Source: Wallemia ichthyophaga EXF-994 (lineage: Eukaryota; Fungi; Basidiomycota). From it: DNA of 32,000 nt. Below the pieces are notes generated by a model. That model had not been told where the DNA came from. It ran no database searches and was given only the letters and a program-made list of their open reading frames with translations. Positions within the stretch are counted from its first letter, which is position 1. Each line of letters begins with the position of its first letter. Positions 3,473-19,414 of the stretch are shown here, piece after piece. The stretch spans positions 42,065 to 74,064 of the forward strand of contig NW_008806301.1 in NCBI RefSeq assembly GCF_000400465.1. Reading direction: 5' to 3'. A program made the position numbers and the translations under genes.

Positions 3473-3544
3473 TCGGTTATGTGGTAGGGGCTATCCTCCC
3501 AGATTCTCATTCTGGAGACCCGGGTTCGATTCCCGGTAACCGAA
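3473..3544 (+). tRNA. tRNA-Glu(CTC)
   Basis: Acceptor TCGGTTA/TAACCGA; anticodon arm CCAGA-TTCTCAT-TCTGG; T arm CCGGG-TTCGATT-CCCGG; T5 run at 3549-3553. Confidence 0.95.
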
Positions 3545-5255: not shown

Positions 5256-5336
5256 GGTTCGATGGTCTAGGGGTATGATTCTCGCTTTGGGACACCAATT
5301 TGCGAGAGGTCCAGGGTTCAAATCCCTGTCGAACCC
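5256..5336 (+). tRNA. tRNA-Pro(TGG) with 9-nt intron (5292-5300)
   Basis: Acceptor GGTTCGA/TCGAACC; D arm TGGTCTAGGGGTATGA; anticodon arm CTCGC-TTTGGG-[ACACCAATT]-T-GCGAG with the intron at the canonical 37/38 position; T arm CAGGG-TTCAAAT-CCCTG. Confidence 0.95.
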
Positions 5337-6948: not shown

Positions 6949-7013
6949 TTCCTCAATATCATTCCATTTCTTCCCCTTCCTCCGCCTACACAAACGCGAC
7001 ATGCCTACCGGAT

Positions 7014-7076
7014 TGTCTGGAATGTCTGGAATGTCTGGAATGTCTGGAATGTCTGGAAGATCTTGAAGATCTGGAA
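7014..7076. repeat. 9-bp minisatellite, 7 units
   Basis: (TGTCTGGAA)x5 followed by GATCTTGAA and GATCTGGAA. Confidence 0.95.
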
Positions 7077-7252
7077 TGCAATGAAGATATAAAGTAATAT
7101 TAACATTTATACAATTTTGAATGAGCAGAATCTCAAGAAAATGCTGCTGGATTTATGCTACTTTCATTATAACAAGATTTTTAAGAATGCTGATCATGAT
7201 TGGTTCTAAGAAATGCGTGAATGCCATTGTCGTTGCCGAGTTCATATGCTTA

Positions 7253-15979: not shown

Positions 15980-17418
15980 CTAATAGTTGAAATTAGCTGC
16001 TACTTCATTCAATGCATCTTCGTCAGAATCTAGAAGATCTATTTCTTCTTCTGGTTGGGATGGTTCTGAGGGTTCATTTGGTTGATGAAGCTGATGAATA
16101 TGATGCTGCGACACTGCTTGCTCCTTCTTCTCTTGCTGTTGTTTCTGTTGCTTCTTCTGCTCATCACTCACATTATCTTGCTTTGAATGATCAAAATTAG
16201 CAGCAACTTGGTCCAACGCATCTTCATCAGAGTCGAGTAAATCAATCTCCTCCCCATCTCGTTGCTGTAATGCTTGATTTTCTGAAACACCCGAGCCCGC
16301 ATCCGCACCGGTCTGCTGAATACTTTGCGACTGGTTCTTGTTCTTATTCTCAACACCTGTATCAGCATTCTTACCAGACAGTTGTTGCCCTTTTACTCCA
16401 ACTTTCAATGAATAGTTGAATGCTTCTTGCATACGACGCACTTTGACGTCGCCGAAACCAGGACATTTCGTCAGCTCATCGGGAGAAGCTTTTACAATAT
16501 TTTTGAAGCTCTGTTGGGAATGTGAGTATGGTAGTGAGTTTGATGCAACACTTACACCAAATCTCGTTAATAGCTGATAGACGTCTGTCTTGTTAACACC
16601 TTTAATCGTCGTGAGGGCGTTATTGACGATACTCTGGTAATCTGTCGGCGTCTTCTCCTTTAGACTGTCTGGAGGTTTATTGTCGAGCTGGAGGTAGAGA
16701 CTGAGATAATGACCTGCTTGTTGTGGACTTATGTGAGTGTTAGTTGTGTATGTTCAGCAGACACTGCACGAAACAGGACTTACGACCAAGCTATAACCAC
16801 AGTCATGTTGTTAATTAGGCATGTCTGTTAAGAACACTGATTTAAGTGAATTCCATAAAGCACTCCATCGCAACTAACCTTTGTTACTTCTTTTATTGAG
16901 CCTTCAGAGTCTGCCTGGATTGATTTTGAGTACATCCTTATACGAAATCATAGACACTCACGACATCGCACATGAGGAGTAGTATACGAAGCTGATACAT
17001 CGCGCCCAGACGCTCTATCCGCATGTGTATGTATTCTGGATGCAAGCGATGATATCGTAGACTTGTATGGGAAGTCAATACGCCTTTTACCAGTCGAAAT
17101 AAGCCCACCTCAAGAACATAATACCTGTACTAGATCCAGCGACGTAATCTGGTACTATATCTGCATACTCCCAGTTGACATTTCTAACTTCTTTAAGAAT
17201 GGGATTACCACGCTGCAATAGTCATCAGGCTGGGCTTCTCCTTCCCTCCACTGCAATCTCACCTGGCACGAATTCACCAGCACTGCATTCCTACTATTGG
17301 GTATTGCACGTTTAGGCGATTGATTTGTACTTTTCTGTGGCTGTGTCTGTGCTTGTCGAGATTGGCTACTCTGCGCTGCGCTCTGCTCCTGCTGAGCTCC
17401 GCTTCCGCTCAAGCTCAT
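15980..17418 (-). CDS. RAD10: ERCC1/Rad10/Swi10 DNA repair endonuclease subunit
   Basis: Spliced VLVNSCQ|[16 protein letters not shown]...MFLS|[11 protein letters not shown]; HhH2 ([11 protein letters not shown]...[11 protein letters not shown]); six short introns; acidic C-terminal tail. Confidence 0.95.
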
Positions 17419-17468
17419 TTTGGCGTGATGTGAGTGCGTTATCAAGCCCCACTTAATATCAAATAGTC

Positions 17469-18980
17469 ATGTTCAAATTGCTGACAACGCTTAAATACAC
17501 TCCAAGTGAAAGTGAGCGTGTGGCGGATGGCGTGTACTTATGGGAAAGCCATATGCATCGCTTGCGTGAAGGTGTTGATGCGTTGAGCCCATTCTCTGCC
17601 TCGGATTTGAGAGAAAGCGACGTAACTAATGAATTGGCCCATTCAATTGGTCTTGCAAATGGTCTTAATCAATCTCATAGAGTTGGTTTTGCGTTTTGAT
17701 TGATTAGCCAGCTAAAGTTTCCCCATAGGTCTCTGTAACTCTCGATCCAAGCACACTGGAAGTTTCAGCAACAGCAACAGAGCTCAAAAGTATGCCTGAT
17801 TGTATGTAACCGCTGTGGTCGCTTTTATAACCTAATAAGCTGCTTAGATCCTGTGAATGTCGTGATAGACAAAGAACCCACGAGGTCATATTCCAAGGTG
17901 CTGCCATACAAGAGTAACAATAGGCGCATTTATTTGCAATCAAAGCTAAGGAATGGTTCGTACTACGTAAATACATTTTCATCTCACAGAAAATCGCAGG
18001 TGTTTCATACTCGACAGTTCGAGATAGCACGTTTGACGTTCTAATGCACAACAAAAATGGATACGTTACTGAGACGACCATTGCAAATATCTTCTACAAG
18101 TTCAACAATGACGACACATGGTACACTCCTCCAGTGGAAGATGGTTTGCTGCCAGGATTAATGAGGAGTCATCTCCTTGATATTGACTTCTGCTCAGAAC
18201 GTTCGTTGTACATATCTGAGCTCACTGTGGGTGTCTAACTCGCTTATCAAAGTCTAATTCGCTTATCAATCTCAACTGGTCTGTTTGAAGAGGAATCACA
18301 TAAAATTAAAAGCTGCAAACGCTTTAAGAGGATTGTTCGATATACAAATTACAGATAACCAAGGTTCACTTATTCCTTGTACCCCAACGCCTATGATGGA
18401 AGCACCAGCGAACTTACCCAAGTTGATAGTATTTGATTTAGATTACACTTTATGGGATCTATGGATAGATACTCACATTTCTGGTGGGTTAGTCTACAAC
18501 CTTCGGATAACACCTAACAATGCTTCAGGACCGATAAAACCATCATCAAATTACAACGAGGTAATTCCAAGACGAGGATCGCCCTTTGGATTCTACAGAG
18601 ATGTCCCAGAAATGCTACAGCGCTTGAAGAGTGAAGGAATTGAAATTGCAGCAGCGAGTAGAACAGCAGCACCGGATTATGCTTACGATGCACTTAAGCA
18701 TCTCAAACTAAAGAATAGGAGTGGTGGTGATAATATCAGCGCAAAGTCTCTGTTCGATTACACTGAGGTATACCCCGGCTCCAAGGTGAAGCATTTCCAG
18801 AAGCTTGCAAAGAAATCTGGCTTTGCGTATGAGGACATGCTATTTTTTGATGATGAGTCTAGGAACAAGGAGGTTGAGTCGCTTGGTGTAACATTTCAGC
18901 TGGTTGGCGTTAGTGGCACGGATGAAAACACTTTGCAGAAAGGAGTCAAAGCCTGGAGACAGCGTCGTGGGATTAGCTGA
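17469..18980 (+). CDS. Fusion: class IV PLP aminodeoxychorismate-lyase-like (Abz2) domain + magnesium-dependent phosphatase 1 (MDP-1, HAD IIIC); 421 aa
   Basis: Exons 17469-17681, 17729-17801, 17848-17955, 18000-18226, 18291-18483, 18529-18980 (1266 nt, phases consistent). Lyase motifs LLTTL, HMHRL, PYKSNNR, FDVLMHN..GYVTETTIANI, GLLPGLMR and ANALRG. HAD motifs FDLDYTLW, ASRT, GSKVKHF and FFDDE. Confidence 0.85.
18235..18272 (+). repeat. 19-bp tandem duplication containing the branch site inside intron 4 of the fusion gene
   Basis: CTAACTCGCTTATCAAAGT / CTAATTCGCTTATCAATCT (16/19 identical). Confidence 0.9.
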
Positions 18981-19414
18981 TGGATTCGCTATTTAATGAT
19001 ACATTTAGATTCATTTAGGTTTGTTTGGTGAGTGTGTGAGTGTTTGAGTGCTTATATTTGCATTCTAAATTGCATATCTTAGATAATACATAATTATCAC
19101 CAAATCACAGCAGGTCAAAGTCATCAAGCTGATCTAGTATACGAAATCCACCACAACATAACGCCACTCACCTCGTCATTGTATTACCTTACAGCTCTTT
19201 TGAACACCCTCATTTACGCGTTTTGTTTCGCATACGCCCTACGCTACGCTCATAGAAATTGACAATTATAATTTATCATGATTAATTTAAATGCAAATAT
19301 CATTTTATACAGTTTTATTGACTTGTCGATTGATAACTGTTCTATTTGAATTGATTTTATGAGTTGAATTTGTTGATCCACCTTGTCTTAACTTGATTAC
19401 CACCTCAAGCTAAT

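What the first reader, a model, noticed from the sequence alone, without database searches (positions are those of the whole stretch)
17469..18980. In-frame fusion of an Abz2-like aminodeoxychorismate lyase with an MDP-1 HAD phosphatase
Seen: six exons with canonical splice signals give one 421-aa ORF. The last conserved element of the class IV PLP fold (KLKAANALRGLFDI) lies in exon 5 and runs with no stop, via a ~20-aa linker (TDNQGSLIPCTPTPMMEAPANL), into a complete HAD IIIC domain with all four motifs. A complete lyase domain therefore cannot be made without the phosphatase attached. Established: Abz2/PabC makes 4-aminobenzoate for folate (and CoQ in yeast); MDP-1 (yeast YER134C) is normally a stand-alone acid phosphatase. 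I do not recall this architecture, but could not search for it. Inference: a Rosetta-stone hint that MDP-1 acts on a folate/pterin or B6 phosphate (e.g. dihydroneopterin monophosphate, PLP/PMP). Alternatively the fusion arose by stop loss during genome compaction: MDP-1 keeps its own ATG-ATG at 18393, and the linker is about the size of the 36-39 bp tandem spacers in this window.
Basis: partly seen in the sequence, partly recalled or inferred. Interest (0 to 1): 0.85.

Follow-up and report, generated by a model that had tools for sequence, protein, structure and literature searches.

The report
Species-specific stop-loss fusion of two neighbouring genes
In the salt-loving fungus Wallemia ichthyophaga, a small PLP enzyme gene (probably aminodeoxychorismate lyase) lost its stop codon and now reads straight into the neighbouring MDP-1 phosphatase gene. 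This is a real, recent, one-species gene fusion, not evidence that the two enzymes work together.

Summary
Exons 17469-17681, 17729-17801, 17848-17955, 18000-18226, 18291-18483 and 18529-18980 give one 421-aa ORF. It has Aminotran_4 at residues 22-220 and a full Acid_PPase/MDP-1 domain at 245-413.

The window is Wallemia ichthyophaga. The ORF is identical to the existing RefSeq/UniProt model XP_009270380.1 / R9A9C0. The stop-free junction is identical in seven other strain assemblies, so it is not a sequencing error.

Four other Wallemia lineages have the same two genes in the same order and strand, but as separate ORFs. Each lyase ends in its own stop just after the conserved ...NALRGxFDI strand, and 42-69 nt later comes the MDP-1 ATG. 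Small indels in W. ichthyophaga removed the stop and left a 42-nt open, in-frame spacer, which is now the linker.

An RNA-derived contig from a W. sebi-complex species covers both genes and the spacer. Read-through transcription therefore probably came before the fusion.

Only W. ichthyophaga shows this architecture among 1.84 billion representative proteins. Three other basidiomycetes lack even the adjacency. There is no transcript or protein evidence from W. ichthyophaga itself.

The parts
17469..17681 (+). Exon 1 (codons 1-71), start of the class IV PLP (ADC-lyase-like) domain
   Evidence: The ATG is about 50 bp from the divergent Rad10 gene's ATG (coordinates mapped to the window).
17729..17801 (+). 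Exon 2. The GTATGT donor at 17802 gives ...KSMPDY|PVN.
   Evidence: The junction matches W. mellicola ...NMPDYAVN and the spliced RNA contig L014.
17848..17955 (+). Exon 3, carrying the catalytic lysine (K117 in LPYKSNNR)
   Evidence: K117 is invariant in the 42-sequence family alignment.
18000..18226 (+). Exon 4 (TETTIANIF and LLPGLMR motifs), ending at the GTGGGT donor
   Evidence: The donor is conserved in L002 and L013. E156, N161, G184 and R187 are invariant.
18227..18290 (+). Intron 4 (64 nt, phase 0). It contains a 19-nt tandem duplication (18233-18269). If the intron is retained, an in-frame TAA (18236-18238) truncates the lyase at ...ELTVGV*.
   Evidence: The homologous intron is the only one retained in the sister-species RNA contig.
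18291..18350 (+). First part of exon 5: the last two beta-strands of the lyase fold (RNHIKLKAANALRGLFDIQI, residues 208-227)
   Evidence: Conserved in 5 Wallemia lineages. Aligns to the C-terminus of 3qqm and 3lul. AF2 strands 211-217 and 221-228 have pLDDT about 86-92.
18351..18392 (+). Linker TDNQGSLIPCTPTP (residues 228-241). This is the former intergenic spacer, now open and in frame. The ancestral stop position aligns to about 18354-18357, where a TAA survives out of frame (gaTAAc).
   Evidence: pLDDT is below 50. Identical in 7 other strain assemblies.
18393..18483 (+). Retained MDP-1 start (ATG-ATG) and HAD motif I (FDLDYT), to the end of exon 5
   Evidence: Homologous to the start codons of the stand-alone W. 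mellicola, W. hederae and L002 MDP-1 genes.
18484..18528 (+). Intron 5 (45 nt, in frame and stop-free)
   Evidence: The homologous intron is spliced out in RNA contig L014.
18529..18980 (+). Exon 6: the rest of the MDP-1 (Acid_PPase, HAD) domain and the TGA stop at 18978-18980

Best explanation
This is a lineage-specific gene fusion made by stop-codon loss between two tandem genes that were already packed almost end to end.

Shown:
- In the genus Wallemia, a short class IV PLP enzyme gene (probable aminodeoxychorismate lyase) is followed 42-69 nt later, on the same strand, by the MDP-1 phosphatase gene.
- On the W. ichthyophaga branch, after its split from the closest sampled relative (dS about 0.8-0.9), small indels in the spacer removed or frame-shifted the lyase stop codon.
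- The remaining 42 nt have no stop and are in frame with the old MDP-1 ATG. The result is one 421-codon ORF: lyase, a 14-residue probably disordered linker, then MDP-1.

Inferred:
- A 42-69 nt spacer cannot hold both a terminator and a promoter, and RNA from a sister species covers both genes and the spacer. Transcription from the lyase promoter probably ran through MDP-1 before the fusion.
- Once the stop was gone, that long transcript, when intron 4 is spliced, would be translated into a two-domain protein. This would now be the only way to make a complete lyase.
- MDP-1 alone may still be made from a shorter transcript using the retained ATG at 18393.
- The fusion is most simply a neutral or nearly neutral by-product of genome compaction. 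It is not a signal of a shared pathway.
For: - The ORF and both domains are real. The junction is identical in 7 other strain assemblies, and at least 17 strain contigs carry models that read through the linker.
- The genes are separate, with stops TAG, TGA, TAA and TAA, in W. mellicola (L001), W. hederae (L013), Wallemia sp. L002 and W. sebi-complex L014. Flanking genes are the same: VTT, MYG1 and Rad10 upstream, CAP_GLY/Mito_carr downstream.
- Contig L014 (1465 nt) lacks exactly four annotated introns, so it is RNA-derived. It runs from 28 nt upstream of the lyase ATG to 97 nt past the MDP-1 stop.
- The lyase is still constrained. dN/dS between W. ichthyophaga and L002 is 0.235. All 11 family-invariant residues, including the catalytic K117, are kept. 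Tajima relative-rate tests are not significant (21 v 12, p=0.12; 15 v 11, p=0.43).
- MDP-1 is under strong constraint (dN/dS 0.03).
- No other Aminotran_4 + Acid_PPase protein appears among the best 150 of 2180 hits in 1.84e9 representatives, where a fusion would score additively. None appears in three word-indexed searches.
- No lyase lies within 5 kb of MDP-1 in three other basidiomycete subphyla.
- Polycistronic transcripts are documented in basidiomycetes (PMC4503453).
Against: - There is no transcript or protein evidence from W. ichthyophaga itself. The reference model is GeneMark-ES ab initio (PMC3849046). The strain models used the reference proteome as evidence, and the strain assemblies were reference-guided (PMC6738226).
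- The sister-species RNA contig retains intron 4, so that RNA would not encode a full lyase. A de Bruijn contig can also join overlapping transcripts rather than represent one molecule.
- The spacer alignment is ambiguous, with several equally good alignments. The exact mutation, a deletion spanning the stop or a frame-shifting indel, is unresolved.
- The selection tests have little power over 230 codons and cannot exclude either recent relaxation or an adaptive benefit.
Confidence: 0.72

Rival explanations
1. The ORF is fused but the fusion protein is not a significant product. MDP-1 is made from its own internal transcript and start codon. Lyase-promoter transcripts mostly retain intron 4 (giving ...ELTVGV*) or end without a stop and are degraded. 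On this reading the lyase is effectively being lost in W. ichthyophaga.
For: - The only RNA evidence, from sister-species L014, retains intron 4.
- The W. ichthyophaga intron 4 carries a 19-nt duplication that lengthens it to 64 nt, against 46 nt in L002.
- The MDP-1 ATG-ATG is conserved.
- The dN estimate on the W. ichthyophaga lyase branch is higher than on the sister branch (0.115-0.138 v 0.052-0.074).
Against: - The relative-rate difference is not significant.
- dN/dS is 0.235, and all invariant catalytic and fold residues are kept.
- There are no frameshifts or stops in 229 lyase codons across the branch since the split from L002 (dS about 0.8).
Confidence: 0.2
2. The fusion is adaptive and reports a functional link (a Rosetta stone). 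MDP-1 would dephosphorylate a folate, pterin, pABA-pathway or B6 phosphate, and tethering it to the lyase would give a benefit.
For: - The gene pair is adjacent in all five Wallemia lineages examined and covered by one RNA contig.
- The fusion is fixed in the species.
Against: - The fusion occurs in one species only.
- Wallemia genomes share long syntenic regions, and here the flanking genes are in the same order too, so the conserved adjacency says little (PMC3849046).
- The adjacency is absent in three other basidiomycetes.
- MDP-1 is merged with unrelated neighbours elsewhere.
- The linker is simply the old spacer.
Confidence: 0.07
3. It is an artefact: a sequencing or assembly error removed a stop, or a gene finder wrongly merged two genes.
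For: - The reference model is ab initio.
- The strain annotations demonstrably over-merge the downstream genes.
- The strain assemblies were reference-guided.
Against: - The junction is identical in 7 further assemblies from independent reads at more than 200x on a different platform, and these assemblies do show SNPs elsewhere in the gene.
- There is no stop in the frame, so no gene finder is needed to see the fusion.
Confidence: 0.01

Closest known systems
The unfused orthologous gene pair in W. mellicola (EIM19110.1 lyase 230 aa + EIM19111.1 MDP-1 180 aa) and W. hederae (E3P99_03988 225 aa + E3P99_03989 180 aa)
   Same: Same order, strand, flanking genes and intron positions. The lyase is 56-57% identical and MDP-1 91-95% identical.
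   Different: They keep a lyase stop codon (TAG or TGA) and a 42-53 nt untranslated spacer. W. ichthyophaga has neither.
Short class IV PLP proteins of the Mlr3007 (PDB 3qqm) / NCBIfam PRK07546 type, including PabB-PabC fusions (Chorismate_bind + Aminotran_4)
   Same: Length of about 200-230 aa. Full-length profile match (E 4e-21). Fold TM 0.90 at 2.2 A rmsd. The invariant K/E/N/R set is the same.
   Different: The match scores are below the NCBIfam equivalog cut-offs. Those proteins are bacterial, fused (if at all) to PabB, never to a HAD phosphatase. The function of 3qqm itself is unassigned.
Characterised ADC lyases: E. coli PabC (1et0), Legionella 3lul, yeast Abz2 (4k6n)
   Same: Class IV fold and shared catalytic motifs. 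They are the next-best profile hits (8e-14, 4e-8 and 3e-6), ahead of BCATs.
   Different: They are larger proteins (269-383 aa) and only the C-terminal half aligns. Orthology to yeast Abz2 is not established.
MDP-1 (mouse 1u7o, human 2wm8; S. pombe P8B7.31; yeast YER134C), Pfam Acid_PPase
   Same: Full-length domain with all HAD motifs; E about 1e-32 to the structures.
   Different: It is normally a stand-alone protein of about 165-240 aa. Here it is the C-terminal half of a 421-aa ORF.
Read-through or polycistronic transcription units in basidiomycetes (Gordon et al. 2015, PMC4503453) and fusions of tandem genes by stop loss
   Same: Two same-strand neighbours covered by continuous RNA in a sister species. 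Stop loss converts them into one ORF.
   Different: Those reports concern Agaricomycetes and separate ORFs. Single-molecule evidence is lacking for Wallemia.

Membership tests
Class IV PLP-dependent enzymes (Pfam Aminotran_4) | Significant full-domain profile match | tested here: met
   70.5 bits against a cut-off of 28.5, covering profile positions 13-219 of 223
Class IV PLP-dependent enzymes (Pfam Aminotran_4) | Catalytic (Schiff-base) lysine and the conserved E / N / R set | tested here: met
   R31, K117, E156, N161, G184, R187 and E198 are invariant in a 42-sequence alignment and present here
Class IV PLP-dependent enzymes (Pfam Aminotran_4) | Complete two-subdomain fold including the C-terminal strands | tested here: met
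   AF2 pLDDT is about 80-97 over nearly all of residues 1-230, with one short dip at 136-140. TM is 0.90 to 3qqm.
Aminodeoxychorismate lyase (PabC / Abz2) | Match to curated PabC equivalog models above cut-off | tested here: not met
   TIGR03461 scores 35.5 bits against a cut-off of 176.85; PRK06092 scores 30 against 260
Aminodeoxychorismate lyase (PabC / Abz2) | Closer to ADC lyases than to BCAT or D-amino-acid transaminases; linked to PabB | tested here: inconclusive
   The profile ranks ADC lyases above BCATs, but by modest margins. Five close non-Wallemia relatives are fused to Chorismate_bind. The best structural match, 3qqm, has no assigned function.
Aminodeoxychorismate lyase (PabC / Abz2) | ADC to pABA + pyruvate activity, or complementation of pabC / abz2 mutants | not testable with these tools
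   Needs a bench assay
MDP-1 / Acid_PPase (HAD superfamily) | Full-length profile match | tested here: met
   194.4 bits against a cut-off of 27, covering profile positions 2-169 of 169. 2wm8 and 1u7o match at E about 1e-32.
MDP-1 / Acid_PPase (HAD superfamily) | HAD motifs I-IV (DxDxT, S/T, K, DD/E) | tested here: met
   FDLDYT, AASRT, GSKVK and FFDDE are read directly and aligned to the MDP-1 structures
Composite (fused) gene derived from two adjacent genes | One uninterrupted ORF here; separate orthologous ORFs in relatives | tested here: met
Composite (fused) gene derived from two adjacent genes | A single mRNA and polypeptide spanning both parts in this organism | not testable with these tools
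   Only a sister-species RNA contig spans both genes, and it retains intron 4. No W. ichthyophaga RNA or peptide data were reachable.
Rosetta-stone (functionally linked) fusion | The fusion recurs in independent lineages, or the partners are linked elsewhere | tested here: not met
   One species only. No adjacency in 3 other basidiomycetes.

The most novel reading that the evidence does not exclude
In Wallemia the lyase and MDP-1 form a genuine dicistronic transcription unit, and W. ichthyophaga has converted it into a bifunctional enzyme that is the cell's only source of ADC lyase. The tethered MDP-1 would then act on a phosphate ester connected with pABA, folate or PLP metabolism. That would give MDP-1, whose physiological substrate in fungi is unsettled, a testable role.
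Probability: 0.08. Interest if true: 0.6.

Novelty: new member of a known kind. Interest (0 to 1): 0.3.

Why it matters
This is a clean, datable natural example of how extreme gene packing turns two neighbours into one ORF. The unfused state is preserved in four related lineages, and there is RNA evidence that read-through came before the fusion.

It has practical value in three ways:
- It warns against reading single-species fusions in compact genomes as functional links.
- It corrects the strain annotations. Their 391- and 362-aa models splice out the last strands of the lyase.
- It offers a simple system to ask whether a class IV PLP enzyme tolerates a C-terminal passenger domain.

It does not currently tell us anything about MDP-1's substrate.

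Tried and rejected
- My first splice model (donor at 17790, acceptor at 17990) broke the frame or gave 417 aa. I corrected it to 421 aa using homologues.
- An alternative donor at 18231 gives a stand-alone lyase ending ...TVEESHKIKSCKRFKRIVRYTNYR*. I rejected it because it removes the conserved NALRGLFDI strands, and the GTGGGT donor and phase are conserved in relatives.
- The MAKER strain models (391 and 362 aa) skip 18202-18355. I rejected them for the same reason.
- Single-sequence AlphaFold was useless, with pLDDT 30.
- A mixed alignment of lyases and MDP-1s misaligned the lyases onto the phosphatase and was discarded. As a result the MDP-1 half of the final model is unreliable.
- I tried to resolve the exact stop-loss mutation by pairwise alignment with four scoring schemes. 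The results were several equally good, mutually inconsistent alignments.
- Literature searches by accession found nothing. The MDP-1 literature search returned nothing bearing on a folate or B6 link.
- tRNA, Rfam and tandem-repeat scans of the window found nothing bearing on the locus except the intron-4 duplication.

Full report
**What is there**

Translating the three forward frames of 17400-19050 and joining them at GT-AG sites gives six exons: 17469-17681, 17729-17801, 17848-17955, 18000-18226, 18291-18483 and 18529-18980. The introns are 47, 46, 44, 64 and 45 nt, and the CDS is 1266 nt, or 421 aa.

My first model used a weaker donor in intron 2 and gave 417 aa.

Pfam finds Aminotran_4 (E 2.5e-19) and a full-length Acid_PPase domain (E 1.7e-57). 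The phosphatase half aligns end to end with the human and mouse MDP-1 crystal structures (E about 1e-32), and the four HAD motifs are readable in the sequence.

**Whose genome, and is the ORF already known**

The closest database proteins are all from Wallemia ichthyophaga. Cluster look-up shows that the 421-aa product is letter for letter EOQ98803.1 / XP_009270380.1 / UniProt R9A9C0. That entry is named 'Putative magnesium-dependent phosphatase P8B7.31' in the type strain EXF-994.

The reference model was an ab initio GeneMark-ES prediction (PMC3849046). The 21-strain population study (PMC6738226) annotated with MAKER, using the reference proteome as evidence. Its 391- and 362-aa models also join the two domains, but they splice out 18202-18355.

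I found no paper that cites the accession or discusses the fusion.

**Not a sequencing error**

I compared the gene with seven other strain assemblies (L003-L009). They differ from the window at 0-3 positions within the gene, and 18291-18400 is identical in all seven.

Those assemblies were reference-guided. However, they come from independent reads at more than 200x on another platform, and they do show SNPs nearby.

**The comparison that explains it**

- W. mellicola (L001): lyase and MDP-1 are separate annotated genes, 230 and 180 aa, 53 nt apart.
- W. hederae (L013): 225 and 180 aa, 42 nt apart.
- An unnamed Wallemia from SRR25399871 (L002): my homology model gives a 228-aa lyase ending ...ELFDIRILK-TAA, 69 nt before the MDP-1 ATG.
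- A W. sebi-complex RNA contig (L014): the lyase ends ...DIVIVW-TAA.

The flanking genes (VTT, MYG1, Rad10 upstream; CAP_GLY/Mito_carr downstream) and the intron positions are the same throughout.

The lyase C-terminal tails are:
- W. mellicola: DIMIV*
- W. hederae: DIHTHPQRQ*
- L002: DIRILK*
- L014: DIVIVW*
- W. ichthyophaga: DIQITDNQGSLIPCTPTP-MMEAP...

The linker is therefore the old spacer. It is now 42 nt long, free of stops, and in frame.

Alignment of the spacer is ambiguous. One solution deletes about 17 nt including the stop. Another keeps the old TAA out of frame (gaTAAc, 18355-18357) after a small indel. I cannot say which is right.

By synonymous divergence, L002 is the nearest sampled relative (dS about 0.8-0.9), followed by W. 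hederae and then W. mellicola. The stop loss therefore happened on the W. ichthyophaga branch.

**Is the last lyase element really needed**

- The segment encoded at 18291-18350 is conserved in all five lineages.
- It aligns to the C-terminal strands of PDB 3qqm and 3lul.
- In an AlphaFold model built on 42 family members it forms strands 211-217 and 221-228, at pLDDT about 86-92. Confidence collapses from residue 231.
- The domain superposes on the whole of 3qqm (TM 0.90, 2.2 A rmsd).

A complete fold cannot terminate before 18978 unless the frame changes. The alternatives I examined both remove these strands: the donor at 18231, and retention of intron 4.

**What the N-terminal domain is**

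It is a compact class IV PLP protein of about 230 aa.
- NCBIfam ranks the PRK07546 'hypothetical' short class IV models first, then the PabC models. All are below their cut-offs.
- A profile of the Wallemia proteins hits 3qqm (4e-21), then ADC lyases (3lul 8e-14, yeast Abz2 4e-8, E. coli PabC 3e-6), then BCATs (5e-6).
- Several of the nearest non-Wallemia relatives carry a Chorismate_bind (PabB) domain on the same polypeptide.

ADC lyase is thus a reasonable but unproven function. 'Abz2-like' overstates the closeness to the yeast enzyme.

**Is the lyase decaying**

- dN/dS between W. ichthyophaga and L002 is 0.235 for the lyase and 0.033 for MDP-1.
- The W. ichthyophaga lyase branch has a higher dN estimate than its sister branch. 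Tajima relative-rate counts are not significant, however: 21 v 12 (p=0.12), 15 v 11 (p=0.43), and 9 v 8 where both outgroups agree.
- All eleven columns that are invariant across 42 family members are intact, including the catalytic K117.

I see no sign of pseudogenisation, though the power of these tests is low.

**Transcription**

Contig L014 (Logan, SRR23314750, 1465 nt) is about 92% identical to W. mellicola in the aligned bases. It lacks exactly four annotated introns: lyase introns 1-3 and the MDP-1 intron. It keeps lyase intron 4. It must therefore be RNA-derived.

It begins 28 nt before the lyase ATG and ends 97 nt after the MDP-1 stop, and it covers the spacer. Either one RNA spans both genes, or two RNAs overlap across the spacer. 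In both cases the spacer is transcribed, and there is no room for a separate terminator and promoter.

Polycistronic transcripts are known in basidiomycetes (PMC4503453).

I infer that read-through existed before the stop was lost. That would make a fusion protein the automatic outcome. This is inference, because no W. ichthyophaga RNA or peptide data were reachable. The retained intron 4 in L014 means that particular RNA would give a truncated lyase.

**Is the architecture found elsewhere, and does it imply a functional link**

- phmmer of the fusion against 1.84 billion representatives found 2180 hits. Among the best 150, only the W. ichthyophaga cluster matches over both domains.
- The long MDP-1 hits carry unrelated partners: SYO1 TPR, GGACT and Blm10/PSME4.
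- The three word-indexed searches show Aminotran_4 + Acid_PPase only in W. ichthyophaga.
- Around MDP-1 in Cystobasidium, Pseudozyma and Mycena there is no lyase within 5 kb, checked by annotation and by tblastn.

The fusion occurs in a single species, in a genome described as about three-quarters coding. In a published survey, W. ichthyophaga also had among the most 'additional domain' events of 20 non-Saccharomycotina fungal proteomes (PMC10158824). This is what accident predicts. The Rosetta-stone reading is not excluded, but it has no positive support.

**Verdict**

This is a real fused ORF that is already in public annotation. It is best explained as a recent stop-loss fusion of two tandem genes that were probably co-transcribed. 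It is of modest interest as a tidy evolutionary example and as an annotation correction. The decisive missing piece is transcript and peptide evidence from W. ichthyophaga itself.

Noticed in passing
window 18233-18269 (inside intron 4, 18227-18290): A 19-nt tandem duplication (GTCTAACTCGCTTATCAAA, 1.9 copies) makes this intron 64 nt. The L002 relative has a single copy and a 46-nt intron. The duplication carries CTAAC/CTAAT branch-point-like motifs and the TAA that would truncate the lyase if the intron is retained. The homologous intron is the only one retained in the sister-species RNA contig.
   Followed up: partly
window about 17418-17469: The Rad10-like gene (minus strand) and the lyase start codons are only about 50 bp apart, so the two genes share a tiny divergent promoter region.
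   Followed up: no
window 18484-18528: The MDP-1 intron is 45 nt, in frame and stop-free. 18291-18980 is therefore one uninterrupted ORF even without splicing. The same is true in L002.
   Followed up: partly
window 19415 to about 26000, minus strand (L003-L009 3447-4512+): The strain annotations give a single 1824-1890-aa gene combining Fungal_trans, CAP_GLY/LRR, Mito_carr and HTH_Tnp_Tc5 domains. Similar merges appear in W. mellicola and W. hederae. These are probably chimeric gene models of several neighbours, or further fusions worth checking.
   Followed up: no
window 17553-17555 (lyase codon 29): Three alleles at one codon among W. ichthyophaga strains (His, Tyr, Arg in P0001, P0003, P0005), in an otherwise almost invariant gene.
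   Followed up: no
L013 3550-3624 (W. hederae lyase): The annotated W. hederae model lacks the 9 residues equivalent to VSYSTVRDS at the exon 3/4 junction. The other species and the RNA contig include them. The acceptor was probably mis-called.
   Followed up: no
window 3473-3544, 5256-5336 and 7010-7078: tRNA-Glu(CTC); tRNA-Pro(GGG), which at 81 nt possibly contains an intron; and a 9-nt x 7.7 tandem repeat (GGAATGTCT).
   Followed up: no
L002 (Logan SRR25399871): A Wallemia genome closer to W. ichthyophaga than W. hederae is (dS about 0.8-0.9 against about 1.9 or more). W. hederae is described as the sister species, so this may be an undescribed or unsequenced species.
   Followed up: partly
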